In this document: in pieces, positions 41,807-50,976 of the stretch
How positions within the stretch are numbered: position 1 is the stretch's first letter
How the letters are laid out: each line of letters begins with the position of its first letter
Origin: Utricularia gibba
Lineage: Eukaryota > Plantae > Magnoliophyta
Length of the DNA: 64,000 nucleotides
Assembly: GCA_002189035.1 (NCBI GenBank)
Contig: NEEC01000015.1
Span: 496,001 to 560,000, forward strand
Direction of reading: 5' to 3'
The notes under the pieces: generated by a model
What the model was told of the DNA's origin: nothing
The model's database searches: none
Seen by the model: only the letters and a program-made list of their open reading frames with translations
Made by a program: the position numbers and the translations under genes

Positions 41807-44295
41807 ATGAATGTGCCGTCCCCAGACAAGCTTGAAGATGGTGGTGAAGAGTATTTTTTGGATGAAAATGATATAATTCATGATTATGATATTGATGAAG
41901 AAGGTACATGGTTGGCTGCTTTGCTTGTTGACTTCATGGCCATTGAATTCCGTTGTTCAATATATTCATGTGGATGGCATGGCTAGCGTGGTGCTTATTT
42001 TCTTTTAGAGAACCATCTCATTTTAATTGTTGTTGATGCTTTCTACTCTTCTTTTTCTATTAATTGAGTGATATCTTCAGAACTCCCCGACGCCATTGAG
42101 GAAGCAGGCTCTGATGGAGAACCAGACTATGGTGGGTTCTTTAGTCTTTTTTCTAACATCTTTATTATTCATGGGTTCTTTTCATTACAACGTATTACTT
42201 TTACTGAATTCTCTAAGAATTGTTATATTATTATTGACAGTTTATTTTCACTTTGAGTTTGCTGCATTTGAATATTAACATATTCATTAATTTGCATGAT
42301 AAGCAGAGGGAGCTGATGATTCCGTGCATATATTTAATGGTCATACAGGTGAACCTTGTTGTGATGCACTTTATCTATTTCCATTGAAGTAGTATGCTTA
42401 TCATTAAGCGAGTTTGATTATATATTCATGAAAAGCAGTTTCACTTAGTTAAAGAGGTTTTTTCGGGGCAGAGTAGTTTTTGTGCGAGGCACACCATACT
42501 TTCTATAGATGTTGTCGAATGGATAGAGCAGTTTTCAATAGTTTTGGAGGAAGGTGCCTAGATTGGGTCAAATGTATCTATTCTGTCTTTCAGTTTTTGT
42601 GATTGCAGATCTTTCTTATTGAAAGTGTAACAATTAGTTTTTTTTATAGCGCTGAAGTGAGTCTTTTGTTATGTAGATGAACTGTATGCCATTGCCTGTA
42701 GTCCCACCGATGCCACATTGGTGGCCACCGGTGGTGGTGATGATAAAGGATTTCTCTGGAGAATTTGCCAAGGAGATTGGGCTTTTGAGTTGAAAGGTCG
42801 GTTCACTCCTCTTTTCCTTATTTAATTTCCTCTTTAAAGGAAATGCTATGTTTTAGTGATTTCAGCTTAACTTCGTAAGTATCTTTCACAGGTCATCAGG
42901 AATCAGTCTCTAGTTTGTCATTTAGCACAGATGGACAACTTCTTGCAACTGGGGATATGAACGGAGTGGTTAAAGTATGGGATGTAGTCAGTGGACATCT
43001 GAAATGCACCCTTGAAGGCCCTGAAGAAATTCAGGTAAAACTGAATAAAACCTTCATATTGTTTACTCATGGTGCTTATATATAACTGTATACATATTTT
43101 AGTGGGTCAAATGGCATCCTAGAGGACATGTGGTGTTAGCTGGTTCAGTGGATTCGTCTATTTGGATGTGGAATGCTGACAAAGCGACGTATATGAATTC
43201 TTTTGCTGGTCATGGGAGTAGTGTAACATGCGGTGATTTTACTCCAGATGGTAATTCCATTTATTTAATCAATTGTAATTTTGCAGTTCATAACGGTTTC
43301 TTGCGTGATGATAATTGGCATTCTGAAGGGCGTAAAATATGTAGCTGTTCTGATGATGCGACTATGAGGATTTTCAATCCCACGAGTGCCACCGTTATTC
43401 ATGTAGTTGAGGGTATGCTTTGACTAGCTTGCATGTGTTGCTTTTCAATAGAAGCCTTGTAATATAATGATCCATCCGGGTTCAGGGATTGCTATATTAA
43501 ATTTGACACCTTCCTCTTTCTGTAATTCCAGGCCATCGATATCATTCCGATGGAGTCACTTGCCTGACCATCACATCTGATTCTTCGCTTGCACTTAGCG
43601 GAGCAAAGGATGGTTCCCTCTGTGTTGTAAACATAGAAACTGGGCAGGTGCCTTTTTTTGTTATCTTTTTCATTTTTACTTGTGGCACCAGCATACAGAA
43701 TGTGTACCTGATGCCTATGACTTACAATTTGCAGGTTGTTAGTTCCTTAAATGGGCATTCCGATTCAGTGGAGTGTGTTGCATTTGAGCCAAGGTTGGAA
43801 CCCTTTCCATCTAATCATTGCCTAACAATTTGAGCCAGCTCCTTTTGCTGCAACTTTGGTCGTGAAATGATATATTGGTGTAGCTCTCGACGAGATAAAT
43901 GGAGGGCTGCAACAGGTGCATTGGATAACAAGCTCATAATATGGGATCAGGATTCGTCTCCCCGTTGCACATGCGAGCATGAGGTCCGCACGGTTTTTAC
44001 TCTCCTCTCTCTTTCTTCTCATTCACCTTAAAGCCACCCTCAAGGGTATATGCATCTTATTTCGTAGTCTGGTGTCACCTGTTTGCTATGGCTCTCCGGT
44101 TCAAGATATGTCGCGACGGGCACGAACAGTGGGACTATTCACATTTGGGACAGTCTTTCTGGTAACCGTGCGAGAATACTCCGTGGACACACCGATAACA
44201 TCCAGTCCATTTCCACATCTAAAGATGGGCGCTTCTTGGTGTCTGCATCGCTTGATGGCACATCTCGAGTCTTCGAGATTGCTGAGTTTATTTAG
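41807..44295 (+). CDS. Angio-associated migratory cell protein / SQT1-like WD40 repeat protein, 11 exons
   Basis: Acidic N-terminus (EEYFLDENDIIHDYDIDEE), CSPTDATLVATGGGDDKGFLW, LEGPEEIQWVKWHPRGHVVLAGS and GHGSSVTCGDFTPDG. All introns are GT-AG and the frame is intact. Confidence 0.88.
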
Positions 44296-44690
44296 TTAGG
44301 CTTTCCAAAGACTGGAGGTATGTTGAAACCAGTGGCTCTTTTTAAGCTTCACATTAGTTCTGTTAAACCAGCCCGAAGGCGGTGGTTATTGGGACGTGTT
44401 GCGTATACATGAAAAACTGTGTAATTTTGAGTTATGGAATTGCATGAAGTTTCAATTATTTCCAGTAATTGTGTAGGCCATTTAATATTGATTTTAGTTT
44501 TCCCATTCAGCTGGCATGGGAAATCACCCTATCGAAGCTATTCCTCTTTTCGGTTTTTTTGCCATCGACAGTGATACTTCCCCATTGCATTGACAGCGAT
44601 TAAACTGGACGTTGAGAGAGAGTGTGTAGTTCGTAAAGCGATCAGGTAGCATAATATCGAACTTGGGCAGTAAGAAGTAGAAGAAGAGTC

Positions 44691-47600
44691 TCACCAGCGT
44701 TTCTTTCTCATCCTCTGGAAGATGGGCTTCAGCGGCTGGCTGGAGTCCGGGGCATGATTAGTATCTGCAGCCACAGCTGACTTGTAAGGAAGCATGAGGG
44801 GCTTCTTAACCGGAGTAGACACATGTACCGGGGACACCGCTGCCTTTCTCTTCAATCGATTCGGCACCTCAAGCCTTTCCAGTATTCTACTAGTTTTCTG
44901 GTCCAGTTCCTTGATGCTTCGTGATGGTGATGAGCTACCGAGATGATCCAGCTTCGCAAGGGATGTGCATTTAGGAGAGGCTGTTATGCCTTCCAGATCA
45001 GTAACGAGAAGCTGTTCCCATTCCTCGATAGTGCATGGACTCGTTGCAAGGGAGTCGCAGGTTGATGGCTTGAGGGTGTTTTGTGCCGACTCTGATGATG
45101 ACGGCGGTGGCGATTCTGTGTCCACTTGTGGAATCGTTTTCACGTGGCTGGTTACGGAATCACCGTGATTGCTCTCTAGAACAAGTGTGGTCTGCGTCAG
45201 CTCAGATGATTGTGGGACTGAACCAGTGGAAATTTTAGGAGGCACGGCACTGCAACAATGAATCAGTTCAAAAAGGAAGCAGTGATCAAGGAATCATGAA
45301 GATGAGAAGGGTACCTTAAGTGGAGGCTCTCCTTAACAAGGAAGTTGAGTTTCTGATGGAAGCCTCTTTCATGCTGGAGAGGATTGTAGTCACCTACTTC
45401 CACCTGGATGTCAGAAGCCAGAGAGGGACAGAACTGGTAAGTTTCCCCTAAAAGAGTTGATGCACAGGGAGAAAGAAAGAAGAATGTAGGCAGGCACTTG
45501 CCAAAAAAATGACGTTAACAAGATCACAGAAATAACTACTAACTGATTCAGGGAATAGCAGCTAGTCTGCTGTTATTTATATGAAATTTTCTTGGCAACC
45601 TTAGAATGCATGTGAGAAAAATTTCCATAGAGTTCAACCTTTTTCAAGGCGGATTGAACGGCTGTTTCTATCTCTTCACTTACAATGGAGTCAGTGACGC
45701 CAGGGGATGGCAAAAACTCTTCTGACGCTGAAAGCCTCTGTATAGCAGAAACATAGAGAATTATGAAACAAAATGGAGGTAAGTTGGCTGCAAGAATGGG
45801 TGGGAATTTTCTAGTTAATGATCTTGCGGTAAAGTGCAAATGAGCGAAGAATAGCAAGATGGTGACACACAAGGTTGAATTGAAATGTTTACTCTAGTCA
45901 TACGTGGAAAAGAAACTAATCTGAGATGCATATTTGATGCATGCAGGTAAACCTAATGAGCAAAATAATTACCCTGAGAAGCATCTGCTCTTGATGGGAA
46001 GGTAACAGAACATAATAGAACCGGAATGAAGTCTCCGTCAGAGTCTCAATGTTACAGTTTGTGTAGCAGACCAACCCATCATCAACAGAATTAAGAAAAC
46101 GGCATACTACTTGAAAAACTGCAGAATAGTAAAGAAAAAAGAGGACAGAGAGAAAGCGAAGATCAATTCACTCTTCATAGACCATGGTCATATTGGAGAG
46201 AACAAATGCTACTTACTTTGGGTGTTAAGCTCTGACTTTCCATTCTCTGAGCCTTTACCAGAAGATGGAGAAACATAGTAGCTGGCACCAGTTATTAGCC
46301 CTGATCAGATTAAAGTATAAAATTAAACGCACATAATGAGGTGCTTGCTTCTAAAGCCATAGTATCATTCAAGAAAAGAGTGACTTGCCAAGAACTGGCA
46401 TACCATAACGAAAGCTAAACTAATGCAATATCTGTCTCCTTTCCATCCCCTAGTTTCATAGGCTAAGGTGCGTATTTTCTGAAATGCCAAAGATATAAAC
46501 ATGCACCTTCGCTTAGTGATCCCAAGTTTGTCCTCTGAATGACATTAAATTCTATAGGACATGAAACTGGCTTCGGCTCTGGATGGTCCTGGAAAGATGG
46601 CATGTGGAGCACGGTAAACGCCCCAACCCTCACGGAGTTTTCAGTTGTATCAAAGGCCCCTTGTTGCTCATCTGTTATGGGAGTTGATGATGAGCAGGTA
46701 CTCTGCTTCTTATTTGAGTTGTATCTGGATGTCTGAATATAAACAAAAAAAGTTCATCCAATGAGTCCATGTTCAAAGCTACTTGGATGCCCAATTTAAG
46801 TTGTTACCCAGGATAGACCCTGGTAAATATTGAAAATGAAAATAATTGATAGTCTGAAACTGAATGCGCAAGAGAAATACACATGCAAATTTTAGAACTC
46901 ACGACCGTTGCTGAAGCTCAAAGAAGGATATGACAAACTTCAATACCTTAGAGTAAACGAACTCATCGTCAATGGAGTTGAAAGATCCACGCAAGTTACA
47001 ACATATACTGTTCACAGGGCCTAACAAATTTGTCTTAAAAACGAAACGAGCTTCTAAGGGGTCCTCACTTTCGTCCTGTAGCTCCAGGGACCATCTTTTG
47101 ATTAGACCATGTAATGCCTGTGGAACTGAGAGAATTTCTGACAGAGTCTGGATTCCATAAACGAAAAAACCTAGCCCCAATAATTTTTCTTGCCCATGCA
47201 TTTTTCTCTTCTTTTTAGATTGAAGGACTAAAGCAGTTTTTCATCATTCAAAAATGAGTGGTCTGATCCCTGATATGAAGAAGGAATAAGAATGCCAGTG
47301 GAATTCTAGATTTCATTTTACTAGATTGAAAAGTGCAGCATCATCATTTAAAGCCCATTCAGAGAACAAAGACCTACTACCTGAAATGCATTTCTGGAAG
47401 GAGCAGTTTTTAAGAGAAGCCAACTGCTGTTCAAAGTGGTCCATAGTCTCCATTACTCCTCCATTAAAGCTTGAGTTTTGGTCTAATAAAATAAATTCTA
47501 CAGTAACAACATTTTCAGATGCATCCTGCAAAGAAAGTCGTGAGATGTGTGGTTCCAAGCATGATTATCCAACGCAAACAAATTATTTCTTCCTACCACC

Positions 47601-48440
47601 AGTGCCTTCATCATCACCGAGTCCAGTGTCACGAAGTAAAGAGAAGTTATCAAAATAACTTTTTTTGTATCATTCGAATCACTCGATGCCCACGGATATG
47701 CTACTTTTTGACTCAGAAGATCTGCCAGCTTGATGTCTACCCCTCAAAAAAAAATCAACACCAATAAATGAAATCAATAGCTTTCACTAGAAAAACTATT
47801 TTATGATGAAGAAATGGGATGCGATACGCACACAGGTCACAACAGTTGTTGTCATCTGGTGCACAACCATCCGAGGGTAGAGTGTTCAGAGCATGGTGGA
47901 GCTCACGCAAGTTGAAGTTTCCCTGGGGGTTATATGCAATCTTCAGCTGGTAGAAAAAAACACCATCAGGCATGAAGTCAAGTAACAAAAATTGCAATTC
48001 TCAAACTAGTTTCACAAGAACGCTTTCTGATGGCCTGTCCATGAACAGTAAACCAACACAGCGTAAAAATAAGAGGTAAAATTGTAAAAGATAGTTTACT
48101 TCACTGCAGCAAGTAGTTCTATTCCGTACTACATAGCAAATCCCAATGCGATCAACCTGATGCTTCGAGCCAATCCTCGGACGAGAAACCGCGTAGTAAT
48201 TTGCGAGCTGAAACAACGACTGATACAACCGGCAAAAGCACAGTGAAGAATTCGACTACAATTCAATATCATCGTCCATCTTCAACTTATTATCACTAGG
48301 TTATTCTTCGAATCAGTCAGCGGAAACGAATTCTTCAGGTGTCCGTAAAAAACGGAGGATCGTTCTATTACCTGCTTCAGATTACGAAACACCGGAGGCG
48401 ACAAGCTTCTCAAATCCAGCACAAAGCAAAGTAGCACCAT
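44691..48440 (-). CDS. Uncharacterised 12-exon protein (about 640 aa), probable M1AP (meiosis 1 arrest protein) homologue
   Basis: The exon chain from ATG 48440 (MVLLCFVLDLRSLSPP) to TGA 44691 is open with GT-AG introns. The gene call is strong; the M1AP assignment rests on remembered motif similarity (see findings). Confidence 0.75.
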
Positions 48441-48789
48441 TTTCCGAACTCCTCCTCTGCGCTTCCCGCCTTCAAAGTTTATCCGACCGGACAAATACTC
48501 GCTTCAGATATTCACGGCAACATATCGATTGACAGAGGTTGCGGTTTCTCTTATATAGATATTCTTTATGAGAAATGGGTTTTTATTATAATTCATTTTT
48601 TGGCTCGAGAACCCGACGATTCGCATATAACTGAAAGCTGCGTGTGAAAGAGAACGCCATTACAAACTCTAAACCTTAGAAGGAAGGAACAAACGGCCAA
48701 AAGAACAGGTCCGGACAAAATCCAGAATGCGAAACTAACCACCAAACAAAATTCAAGCACCAGATGATTGTCTTCTTCTCCAGAGCCGA

Positions 48790-50976
48790 TCAATCATCCC
48801 TTCTCGTGTTCCTTCTACGAGGAGCAGCAGCAGCATCACCATCATTCTCGTCTTTATCGTCAGTAATCTCCTGAATGTCCGAAGACTGGGCAATGTTCGT
48901 TGCCTCCTTGCTCTCAGCCTTGGCTTGAGGAGCCTGTAGTGCAACATTACAATGATGGTTAGATCACACCCAAGCAGCAAGGGTTGCGCTCAAGTCAATG
49001 CTGGAATAGTGAAGAGATAACTTACCGGCTTCTTACGACCGAAAACTAGCCTGAAGAAAAGAGACAAGATGATAACCACGATGGAGACAAGGACACCAAT
49101 TGCGAGGTTGGGTTGCTTCTCAGCCTTCTCAATCAGGTCCTGAAAATGAAGAACGATTGCAGGTTAAGATACATATGATATGGAGTAGCTAATGATCCAT
49201 CTTAGTTAGTTATACCAACACTTACCAAAACCTTGCCCTTGTGTTCACCCAAGAAAGGGAGGTCAGCGGCCTTGTAAAGGTAGTCGAACACCACTTTCTG
49301 ATTTGGTTAAACAAGAGAACCTTCAGCATGAAGGGTGAATAAAGGAAAGGGGGTTTAAACAAGTATCCTCAATCAATTACCTGGAAACCCTTGAGCCCAT
49401 CGGAGCCACTGGGTTCTTCAGCTTTTTGTTTCTCTTTCTCAGCCTCGAACTTGGGCTTCCAGTTAGCATCACGGTATGATGCTGCAACTTTCTCGCTTGA
49501 AGCAACCAAAATGTTGTCAAACAGTATACCATCTTGCATTGTCCAAATTTCAATTCCAATAGCAGCAATTGGTTCATAGTTTGGACTGTCGAGCTCAAAA
49601 TACTCAGGATTATCAATGTCCCTGGGCTTCCATATTCCCTTGTAATTGGGGTTATCGATGAGCGGGGCGCGCCATTTTCCCTTGTAAGCAGGGTTCTTCT
49701 TCTTTGGCCTCTTCCACTCACCACATCCAGGAGCTTCTTGACACTTGGGATTTTCAATCTTAGGTGCCTCAAACTCACCATCCTCCTCATCATCCCAATC
49801 TTCAGGTTTTGTTGCATCTGGATCATCGATTTCCTCAGGCTCATCATCCAACCACCCTTCAGGTTTCACAGCATCTTCGTCATCAATTTCCATTGGAGCA
49901 TCCTCATCCCAGTCATCCGGTTTTGTTGCATCCGTATCAGGAATTTTCTCCCTCTCATCCCAATCCTCTGGTTTCTTATCATCCGGATCGGGGATGGTCT
50001 TAGGAGGAATAATTGGTGGTTCAAAATCATCCTTAGATAGAATATTGGTCTTCTTCTTCTCTTCGCCATCAATCAGAATCCTCAATTCATTATCCGGCTT
50101 CAAAATGGCAGTGTAGACATGGGTCAACTTGTCATACGGCACAGAGGGTGGAAGCTGGAGATGGTGTTCAACAAAGTTTCCAGTCTTTGGGTTTTTGTGC
50201 TTCAGAATGAAGTGAACCTTGTTTGTTGCACCACATTTATCGGGTCCAAACATTATTGTGTAAGGTGACTCATTATCAAACTCCTTCGGAGTCCAACCAG
50301 CTTCCTGAGGCCTCAAGAATTTGATATAAGCACCACCACATTCAAGTCCTTCTTGGAGACGAACCTCATACTGAAGTACAACGGTTCCATCTTTCAGGTC
50401 CACGGGCTCATCAAGTTCCTTCACAATTGCATACTTCCGTGCCTTCTCACTCACAAGAAGCCCATAATCATCGTGTCCTTCACTCTTTTCGTGTTTCCAA
50501 ACGCCTGATATTATAAAACATTTTAAAGAAAATTTAAAATTACAATTTCAGCACCTAGAAAGTCACAAGCTTGAACTACTTTCCACACAAAAAGCACAAA
50601 CGTTAATACATTCGCTATTTCCCAATCGAGAAAATAAACAGAAACTTCAAACCAAACCAGGAAACTCCAGGAGCAAAATCTCTAGACATATAATTGTTAA
50701 GACAAAAAGGAGCAGGAAAACAAAAACAAATCTCACCCGTATATTCCTTATTCTCAGACAAAGTCCATGTCCCCTTGAAGTCCTCATCAAACGATTCATA
50801 GAATTTCTAAACGGAAAGCGAAAACAACAAACTCAAAACACCAATAAAATTAATAAACGATGATATCAAAATAAAGAAAAGCATTAAAGGAACACTACTC
50901 ATACCACATCATCGGAGGCGTGTAGACTCCCAAAGAAGCAGGCTATCGCCAGCAACAGCAGCAGAAACGATTTCAT
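48790..50976 (-). CDS. CNX1: Calnexin, 6 exons
   Basis: Signal peptide [33 protein letters not shown]-domain repeats ([26 protein letters not shown]), a TM segment and C-terminal [10 protein letters not shown]. Confidence 0.97.

What the first reader, a model, noticed from the sequence alone, without database searches (positions are those of the whole stretch)
44691..48440. Probable plant homologue of the mammalian meiotic crossover factor M1AP
Splicing this anonymous 12-exon gene by hand gives a protein whose motifs run colinear with human M1AP as I remember it. Pairs (this gene vs M1AP): PQGNFNLRELHHALNTL vs VKGNFARLQTCISEL; KVILITS vs LEITILTS; FNVIQRTNLGSLSEGLITGASYYVSPSS vs LQVIKALKSSGLCESLTYGLPFILRPTS; ELNTQIFQVVCRFL vs ETNQQHFHALCHSL; FYYVLLPSHQEQMLLRRLSASEEFLP vs FYVIMPSHSLTLLVKAVATRELMLP; QSALKKVEVGDYNPL vs ESMLDSLELEPTYNPL. 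M1AP partners the ZZS complex (SHOC1-TEX11-SPO16) in mammalian class I crossover formation, and plants have the ZZS equivalents SHOC1, ZIP4 and PTD. I know of no characterised plant M1AP, so this may be an unrecognised plant ZMM component. The M1AP segments are recalled, not looked up, and the functional link is inference.
Basis: partly seen in the sequence, partly recalled or inferred. Interest (0 to 1): 0.8.

Follow-up and report, generated by a model that had tools for sequence, protein, structure and literature searches.

The report
Plant M1AP-like Ku-fold gene
This is a real, expressed 12-exon plant gene for a Ku-shaped protein whose nearest known relative is the mammalian meiotic crossover helper M1AP; nobody has studied the family in plants, and the M1AP literature calls M1AP vertebrate-only.

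Summary
A minus-strand gene at 48440..44691 has 12 coding exons. RNA contigs from three public runs confirm all 11 GT-AG introns. They also corrected three acceptors in my own first hand model. The product is 656 aa.

It is the orthologue of Arabidopsis AT5G07380, an uncharacterised family of about 650 aa. I found members in angiosperms, gymnosperms, ferns, lycophytes, a moss and a partial hit in a charophyte alga.

An AlphaFold model of a 46%-identical orthologue shows a vWA-like domain, a Ku beta-barrel and a disordered tail with conserved short motifs. Against 550,129 Swiss-Prot models, mouse and human M1AP rank first and second (E 4e-18 and 1e-17), ahead of Ku80 and Ku70 (9e-16 or weaker). 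INTS13 and INTS14 are not in the top 30. Language-model features put a chordate M1AP cluster nearest among named non-plant families. The Atlas shows Pfam M1AP_N on 21% of members of two plant clusters. Some sources already name plant members "Meiosis 1 arrest protein".

So the homology is supported. It is already implicit in databases but absent from the literature. I could not run a direct profile comparison with animal M1AP. A meiotic, ZZS-linked role is inference only.

The parts
44576..48585 (-). Transcribed span (5' UTR, 12 exons, 11 introns, 3' UTR) as far as RNA contigs reach
   Evidence: contig pieces run from 44576/44595 to 48541/48585 in runs X1, X2, X4 and X6.
48372..48440 (-). Exon 1 (coding part), ATG at 48440; aa 1-23, first beta-strand of the vWA-like domain (MVLLCFVLDLRSLS)
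   Evidence: junction 48372|48219.
48100..48219 (-). Exon 2, aa 24-63
   Evidence: Acceptor at 48219 from RNA. It restores the family motif SL(F/L)QLAN seen in orthologues.
47832..47946 (-). Exon 3, aa 64-101 (YNPQGNFNLRELHHALNTL motif)
   Evidence: Junctions 48100|47946 and 47832|47736; conserved columns Y71 P73 F77 L79 H83 A85.
47597..47736 (-). Exon 4, aa 102-148 (KKVILITS strand)
   Evidence: Acceptor at 47736 from RNA.
47381..47525 (-). Exon 5, aa 149-196
   Evidence: Junctions.
46947..47125 (-). Exon 6, aa 197-256; end of the vWA-like domain and start of the Ku-type barrel
   Evidence: The main acceptor at 47125 is seen in X1, X2 and X4. A minor acceptor at 47117 is seen in X1 only; it is 8 nt shorter and shifts the frame. 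The phmmer hits start at query residue 22 or thereabouts, which agrees with 47125.
46507..46732 (-). Exon 7, aa 257-331; barrel strands. This is where the family's C-x-C-H...C-P cluster would lie; it is absent here
   Evidence: Junctions; alignment.
46217..46300 (-). Exon 8, aa 332-359
45973..46118 (-). Exon 9, aa 360-408 (IFQVVCRFL helix, FYYVLLPSH strand)
   Evidence: invariant columns N369 F373 L380 Y407 P411 S412.
45639..45737 (-). Exon 10, aa 409-441
45315..45403 (-). Exon 11, aa 442-470 (DYNPLQHERGFHQKLN, C-terminal arm helix)
   Evidence: invariant P464 and H472.
44691..45249 (-). Exon 12 (coding part), aa 471-656 plus the stop codon; disordered tail
   Evidence: The orthologue model has pLDDT below 50 over residues 468-652.
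47073..48440 (-). vWA-like alpha/beta domain (aa 1-214), introns included in the span
   Evidence: Secondary structure of the orthologue model, mapped onto the window protein.
45723..47060 (-). Ku-type beta-barrel core (aa 219-413), introns included
   Evidence: Ku70/Ku80 are the best solved-structure matches. The Atlas gives TM 0.58-0.65 to Ku clusters for residues 1-470.
45006..45047 (-). Conserved tail motif 1, (I)EEWEQL(L)V, predicted helix
   Evidence: W546 and L549 are invariant in 50 orthologues; mapped.
44871..44900 (-). Conserved tail motif 2, TSRILERLEVP, predicted helix
   Evidence: I589 L590 E591 R592 L593 P596 are invariant; mapped.
44694..44744 (-). Conserved basic C-terminus, SSQPLKPIFQRMRKKRW (looks like a nuclear localisation signal)
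   Evidence: Near-invariant S640 Q641 P645 F647 Q648 R649 K651 R652; alignment. The NLS reading is my inference.

Best explanation
The gene is the intact, expressed orthologue of Arabidopsis AT5G07380 in a fast-evolving lamiid (asterid) eudicot. It encodes a member of a family of about 650 aa that I found from angiosperms to a moss, with a partial hit in a charophyte alga. The family belongs to the Ku superfamily: an N-terminal vWA-like domain, a Ku-type beta-barrel and a C-terminal arm, followed by a disordered tail of about 190 aa with three or four conserved short motifs and a basic end. Within that superfamily its closest known relative is animal M1AP, which has itself been described as a fourth human Ku paralogue. 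By analogy, the most likely mechanism is a non-catalytic nuclear adaptor in recombination. The Ku-like body would give a nucleic-acid or partner-binding platform. The conserved tail motifs would dock partners, with ZIP4 of the ZIP4-SHOC1-PTD complex as the prime candidate. The effect would be to enhance class I crossover formation rather than to be strictly required for it. Shown here: the gene structure, its transcription, the family's range, the fold, and M1AP as the nearest known relative. Inferred only: DNA or partner binding, nuclear localisation, and any meiotic role.
For: Gene model and RNA junctions. Full-length colinear orthologues at 42-47% identity. The window protein keeps 42 of 44 invariant and 88 of 118 near-invariant family columns. 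Family range: angiosperms and the 'like AT5G07380' name; Taxus; Ginkgo, Cryptomeria, Adiantum, Diphasiastrum and Sphagnum; Selaginella, Ceratopteris and Closterium. Fold: model; Ku70/80 top the PDB search at E 6e-15 to 1e-12. M1AP link: mouse and human M1AP rank 1 and 2 of 550,129 Swiss-Prot models (E 4.1e-18 and 9.8e-18, 15% and 14% identity), against 8.7e-16 for the best Ku. A chordate M1AP cluster scores 0.94 with 202/256 shared features, and M1AP_N sits on 21% of members of two plant clusters. Source names 'Meiosis 1 arrest protein'. Human M1AP as a vWA + Ku core + Ku_C paralogue: PMC11377751. M1AP binds TEX11 and loses that binding without its last 97 aa: PMC12162868.
Against: I made no direct sequence-profile comparison with animal M1AP. 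The local Pfam copy gave no M1AP_N match to any member scanned and appears not to hold that family. The Foldseek margin over Ku is only about two orders of magnitude. TM-scores on the full-length model are low (0.33-0.42), because of disordered tails and domain orientation. The structure is that of a 46%-identical orthologue, not the window protein. The model is of moderate quality (mean pLDDT 57.8; the core mostly 65-85). The window protein lacks the family's conserved Cys/His cluster. I have no tissue information for the RNA runs. AT5G07380 was not found in the stored supplements of two Arabidopsis meiocyte transcriptome papers. PMC12162868 states that M1AP is conserved only down to fish.
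Confidence: 0.7

Rival explanations
1. It is an independent, plant-lineage Ku paralogue. On this view it arose from a Ku70/Ku80-like ancestor separately from animal M1AP, the resemblance to M1AP reflects shared Ku ancestry and loss of Ku-specific parts, and it shares no function with M1AP.
For: Foldseek E-values for Ku80/Ku70 (8.7e-16 to 1e-12) are close to those for M1AP (4e-18 and 1e-17). In AFDB clusters, probable animal M1AP models and Ku models are interleaved at ranks 10-30. No member outside Streptophyta was retrieved by sequence. PMC12162868 reports M1AP only in vertebrates.
Against: Both M1AP entries outrank every Ku entry and have the highest identity among non-plant hits. Language-model features favour M1AP over Ku. 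The M1AP-specific Pfam model PF28287 is reported on a fifth of members of two plant clusters. No Pfam Ku, Ku_N or Ku_C match was found in 50 members even at E up to 10.
Confidence: 0.2
2. It is a true M1AP homologue whose plant role is somatic or general, for example DNA repair, replication or transcription-coupled processes as for other Ku-like proteins (Ku, INTS13/14, Treslin N-terminus), rather than class I crossover formation.
For: The transcript is assembled at moderate depth in RNA runs of three studies without any selection for meiotic tissue. AT5G07380 is absent from the stored supplement tables of two meiocyte-enriched gene lists. I found no paper linking this family to meiosis in plants: AT5G07380 occurs in a single, unrelated paper, and no paper joins M1AP with plant ZMM genes.
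Against: Tissue of origin is unknown for the runs. The supplement files may be truncated. Mouse and human M1AP are functionally tied to ZZS, and plants keep ZIP4, SHOC1 and PTD (established knowledge).
Confidence: 0.3
3. It is the plant counterpart of Integrator subunit INTS13 or INTS14, which form a Ku70/80-like heterodimer.
For: INTS13 (Mat89Bb) and INTS14 clusters appear among the language-model neighbours at 0.92 and 0.91. They share the vWA + Ku-barrel architecture (PMC11377751).
Against: Neither INTS13 nor INTS14 is among the top 30 Swiss-Prot structural hits or the top 50 PDB hits. Their feature overlap (171-181 of 256) is lower than that of chordate M1AP (202 of 256). No Pfam Mat89Bb or IntS14 match was found in 50 members.
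Confidence: 0.03

Closest known systems
M1AP (meiosis 1 arrest/associated protein; mouse Q9Z0E1, human Q8TC57; Pfam PF28287 M1AP_N)
   Same: It is the best structural match of the family model, with a colinear alignment over nearly the whole folded part. The architecture is the same: vWA, Ku core and C-arm. It is the nearest named non-plant family by language-model features. M1AP_N is reported on part of the plant clusters. In M1AP a C-terminal region is needed for partner binding; here the tail carries the most conserved short motifs.
   Different: Identity is only 14-15%. The plant proteins are about 120 aa longer, with a long disordered tail. Most plant members have a C-x-C-H...C-P cluster in the barrel region; I do not know whether M1AP has one. 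No plant member has any functional data. M1AP is described in the literature as vertebrate-only.
Ku70/Ku80 (XRCC6/XRCC5; Pfam Ku_N, Ku, Ku_C)
   Same: The fold is the same. Ku chains are the best solved-structure matches (E about 1e-13 to 6e-15). The Atlas gives TM 0.58-0.65 for residues 1-470.
   Different: No sequence-level match to the Pfam Ku, Ku_N or Ku_C models or to PDB Ku chains. No SAP or Ku_PK_bind domain was detected. Plants have separate canonical KU70 and KU80 genes, which appear as weaker hits.
INTS13/INTS14 (Integrator Ku-like module) and the Treslin/Sld3 N-terminal domain
   Same: They are further members of the vWA + Ku-barrel architecture and turn up as weaker neighbours.
   Different: Their scores are clearly lower. 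They are absent from the top structural hits.

Membership tests
M1AP family (Pfam PF28287 M1AP_N; 'Meiosis 1 arrest protein') | Significant match to an M1AP-specific sequence profile | not testable with these tools
   The local Pfam copy returned no M1AP_N match for exons or for any of the 50 orthologues scanned, and appears not to hold PF28287. Indirect evidence: the ESM Atlas (Pfam 38.1) lists M1AP_N on 21% of members of two Streptophyta clusters that hold the family. Several sources name plant members 'Meiosis 1 arrest protein'.
M1AP family (Pfam PF28287 M1AP_N; 'Meiosis 1 arrest protein') | M1AP is the nearest known protein by structure (forward best hit) | tested here: met
   Mouse and human M1AP rank 1 and 2 of 550,129 Swiss-Prot AlphaFold models, ahead of all Ku entries. 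This was tested on a 46%-identical orthologue (P0171), not on the window protein. The reverse search was not possible.
M1AP family (Pfam PF28287 M1AP_N; 'Meiosis 1 arrest protein') | vWA + Ku-core + C-arm architecture | tested here: met
   Model secondary structure; Ku hits; architecture of human M1AP from PMC11377751.
M1AP family (Pfam PF28287 M1AP_N; 'Meiosis 1 arrest protein') | Monophyly with animal M1AP within the Ku superfamily | not tested
   No tool returned an animal M1AP sequence, so no tree or profile-profile comparison could be made.
M1AP family (Pfam PF28287 M1AP_N; 'Meiosis 1 arrest protein') | Binding to ZZS (TEX11/ZIP4, SHOC1, SPO16/PTD) and promotion of class I crossovers | not testable with these tools
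   This needs interaction assays and mutants. No plant data were found in the literature library.
Ku70/Ku80 | Match to the Pfam Ku core (PF02735), Ku_N or Ku_C models | tested here: not met
   No such match in 50 family members at E up to 10. The profile search against PDB sequences found no Ku chain.
Ku70/Ku80 | Ku fold (vWA + beta-barrel + arm) | tested here: met
   Foldseek PDB top 50 are all entries of Ku-containing complexes. This supports membership of the superfamily, not of Ku70/80 proper.
Integrator INTS13/INTS14 | Match to Mat89Bb or the IntS14 domains, or best structural hit to them | tested here: not met
   No Pfam match. They are absent from the top 30 Swiss-Prot and top 50 PDB hits.

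The most novel reading that the evidence does not exclude
The streptophyte AT5G07380 family is the true orthologue of animal M1AP. That would make M1AP an ancient eukaryotic accessory of the ZZS (ZIP4-SHOC1-PTD/SPO16) complex rather than a vertebrate invention, and an unrecognised pro-crossover factor in plants. Its conserved tail motifs would dock on ZIP4.
Probability: 0.3. Interest if true: 0.8.

Novelty: new member of a known kind. Interest (0 to 1): 0.55.

Why it matters
[quoted passage not shown] A conserved family found across land plants, with a partial hit in a charophyte alga, whose nearest known relative is M1AP would push its origin much deeper. It would also give plant meiosis research a cheap test: the Arabidopsis orthologue is AT5G07380, and no paper in the library addresses its function. 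If it promotes class I crossovers it would be a new handle on recombination rate in crops. If it does not, it is still an uncharacterised third Ku-like protein of plants. The window gene itself is an ordinary, if fast-evolving, orthologue.

Tried and rejected
1. My first hand-spliced model (676 codons) had three wrong acceptors. RNA contigs corrected them.

2. Pfam scans of single exons, six orthologues and 50 orthologues gave nothing meaningful. The library copy appears to lack M1AP_N.

3. The Atlas search with an 80-aa exon fragment was uninformative.

4. A profile search of PDB sequences gave only chance-level hits.

5. I tried to reach animal M1AP by sequence. The word-indexed search cannot reach relatives at about 15% identity and lists only 120 rows. 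So no hhalign comparison or tree with M1AP was possible, and I did not type M1AP from memory.

6. The window's own spliced protein has no reference, so I did not fold it or search with it whole. I used orthologue P0171 as a proxy and compared the window protein locally.

7. Supplement look-ups for AT5G07380 in two meiocyte transcriptome papers found nothing. This is weak negative evidence because stored files may be cut.

8. I considered and rejected the INTS13/14 reading.

9. Source names such as 'Sperm protamine like', 'Ig-like domain-containing' and 'Replication factor A C-terminal domain-containing' are best read as annotation noise. They probably come from the basic tail or from fused gene models.
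Full report
**Observation**

The region 44691-48440 holds a minus-strand gene. I spliced it by hand into a 12-exon open frame.

All 11 introns are present in the RNA contigs of runs X1, X2 and X4, with CT..AC ends on the + strand, which is GT..AG on the gene strand. The RNA corrected three acceptors of my first model:
- Exon 2 begins at 48219.
- Exon 4 begins at 47736.
- Exon 6 begins at 47125.

A minor acceptor at 47117 (run X1 only) shifts the frame. Contigs covering 47100-47410 show some retention of intron 5. The corrected CDS is 1971 nt and encodes 656 aa. Contigs extend to 48585 on the 5' side and to 44576 on the 3' side.

**What family it belongs to**

A phmmer search with exon 6 against 1.84 billion representative proteins gave 57 hits. 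None reached E 1e-30. The full-length hits are 600-670 aa. Those proteins align with the window protein end to end: 42-47% identity over residues 1-655.

A profile of 12 of them retrieved several hundred plant proteins. Almost all are named 'uncharacterized' or 'hypothetical'. One is named 'like AT5G07380'. A few carry the name 'Meiosis 1 arrest protein' (Cajanus, Arachis, Medicago, Heracleum; later Ananas). Others carry 'Ku domain-containing protein' or 'Sperm protamine like'.

Further look-ups show the family in these groups:
- Gymnosperms: Taxus, Cryptomeria, Ginkgo.
- Ferns: Adiantum, Ceratopteris.
- Lycophytes: Diphasiastrum, Selaginella.
- A moss: Sphagnum.
- A zygnematophyte alga: Closterium, a partial match covering 33% of the query.

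In a quick tree the window protein nests among lamiid asterids (Lithospermum, Solanum/Lycium, Forsythia). It has the longest terminal branch of 51 sequences. It keeps 42 of 44 invariant and 88 of 118 near-invariant family columns. I therefore read it as an intact orthologue in a fast-evolving lineage.

**Fold**

No Pfam model in the local library matches the exons or the orthologues. A family profile finds no solved structure by sequence.

I folded the closest orthologue with a protein id (P0171, Forsythia, 46% identical) using a 50-sequence alignment. The model has mean pLDDT 57.8. The folded core, residues 1-467, is mostly 65-85. The tail, residues 468-652, is below 50. The secondary structure reads as follows:
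- An alpha/beta vWA-like domain, residues 1 to about 220.
- A beta-barrel, about 225-425.
- Arm helices, about 444-483.
- A disordered tail with two short helices that coincide with invariant motifs, EEWEQL and TSRILERLEVP.

Foldseek against the PDB returns only entries of Ku70/Ku80-containing complexes in the top 50 (E 6e-15 to 8e-12). The Atlas gives TM 0.58-0.65 to Ku clusters for residues 1-470. The family therefore belongs to the Ku superfamily.

**Link to M1AP**

Against the AlphaFold models of Swiss-Prot (550,129 entries), mouse M1AP (E 4.1e-18, 15% identity, hit residues 23-529) and human M1AP (E 9.8e-18, 14%) rank first and second. The best Ku is Arabidopsis KU80 at 8.7e-16. INTS13 and INTS14 are not in the top 30.

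By protein-language-model features, the nearest named non-plant cluster is a chordate 'meiosis 1 arrest protein' cluster with PF28287 M1AP_N on all members. It scores 0.94 with 202 of 256 shared features. Ku and Integrator clusters score 0.91-0.93 with 171-187 shared features.

The same resource lists M1AP_N (Pfam 38.1) on 21% of the members of two Streptophyta clusters that hold this family. A 2024 survey independently described human M1AP as a fourth human Ku paralogue with vWA, Ku core and Ku_C (PMC11377751).

**What is missing**

I have no direct profile-profile comparison and no tree, because no tool returned an animal M1AP sequence and I did not type one from memory. The margin over Ku is modest. 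An independently derived plant Ku paralogue remains a live rival; I give it about 0.2.

**Mechanism**

The mechanism is inferred. In mouse and human, M1AP binds the ZZS proteins. It behaves as an enhancer of class I crossover formation rather than an essential component. It loses TEX11 binding when its last 97 residues are removed (PMC12162868).

In the plant family the strongest conservation outside the folded core lies in short tail motifs and a basic C-terminus. This is the pattern expected of docking motifs and a nuclear localisation signal.

My best reading is a nuclear Ku-like adaptor whose tail recruits partners, with ZIP4 the obvious candidate. Nothing here shows meiotic expression, DNA binding or any interaction. 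The RNA runs are of unknown tissue. AT5G07380 was not found in the stored supplements of two meiocyte transcriptome papers.

**Novelty**

No paper in the library links M1AP to plants or characterises AT5G07380. A 2025 paper states that M1AP is conserved only down to fish.

The link already exists in automatic names and in a recent Pfam family. The finding is therefore a new member of a known kind, not a new kind. It is a well-founded and cheaply testable hypothesis for plant meiosis.

I did not check it.

Noticed in passing
window 46650-46960 (exon 6/7 junction region; aa about 250-275): Most family members carry a Cys/His cluster here, (P-C-x-T-)C-x-C-H-G ... about 15-20 aa ... C-P; 113 of 129 full-length-sized fetched proteins match CxxCxCH. 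It could be a zinc site. The window protein has replaced or deleted every one of these residues (SKTSRY...STCSSSTP), across an RNA-confirmed junction. It is also missing or altered in Nepenthes and Tetracentron entries.
   Followed up: partly
window 47100-47410: Exon 6 has an alternative acceptor at 47117 (run X1 only), 8 nt downstream of the main one at 47125, which shifts the frame. Separate contigs run unspliced through intron 5, with depth up to about half that of the spliced form in X4. These look like unproductive isoforms.
   Followed up: partly
window 48512-48523 (-): A three-codon upstream ORF (ATG TTG CCG TGA) lies in the RNA-supported 5' UTR, 83 nt before the main ATG.
   Followed up: no
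window 44083-44295 (+) and 48790-49200 (-): The neighbours are tightly packed. A WD40-repeat gene on the + strand ends at 44295, about 280 nt from the furthest point the RNA contigs reach on this gene's 3' side (44576). A minus-strand gene for a small protein with a hydrophobic helix and an acidic/basic C-terminus stops at 48790, about 200 nt upstream of this gene's 5' UTR. Introns of 65-255 nt and this spacing indicate a compact genome.
   Followed up: no
whole gene product (tree of 51 family members): The window protein sits among lamiid asterids but has the longest terminal branch in the tree: 0.76 substitutions per site, against 0.2-0.6 for the others. This suggests a lineage with an accelerated substitution rate.
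   Followed up: partly
P0239 (Closterium sp., 1029 aa): The only non-embryophyte hit is a 1029-aa charophyte protein that matches 33% of the moss query at 39% identity. I did not resolve whether this is a fusion, a longer form or a gene-model artefact.
   Followed up: no
P0076, P0198, P0028, P0179 (Gossypium, Salix, Acorus, Nelumbo entries): Several database entries fuse this family with cupin domains or PPR proteins, or are otherwise over-long. They are probably merged gene models of neighbouring genes.
   Followed up: no
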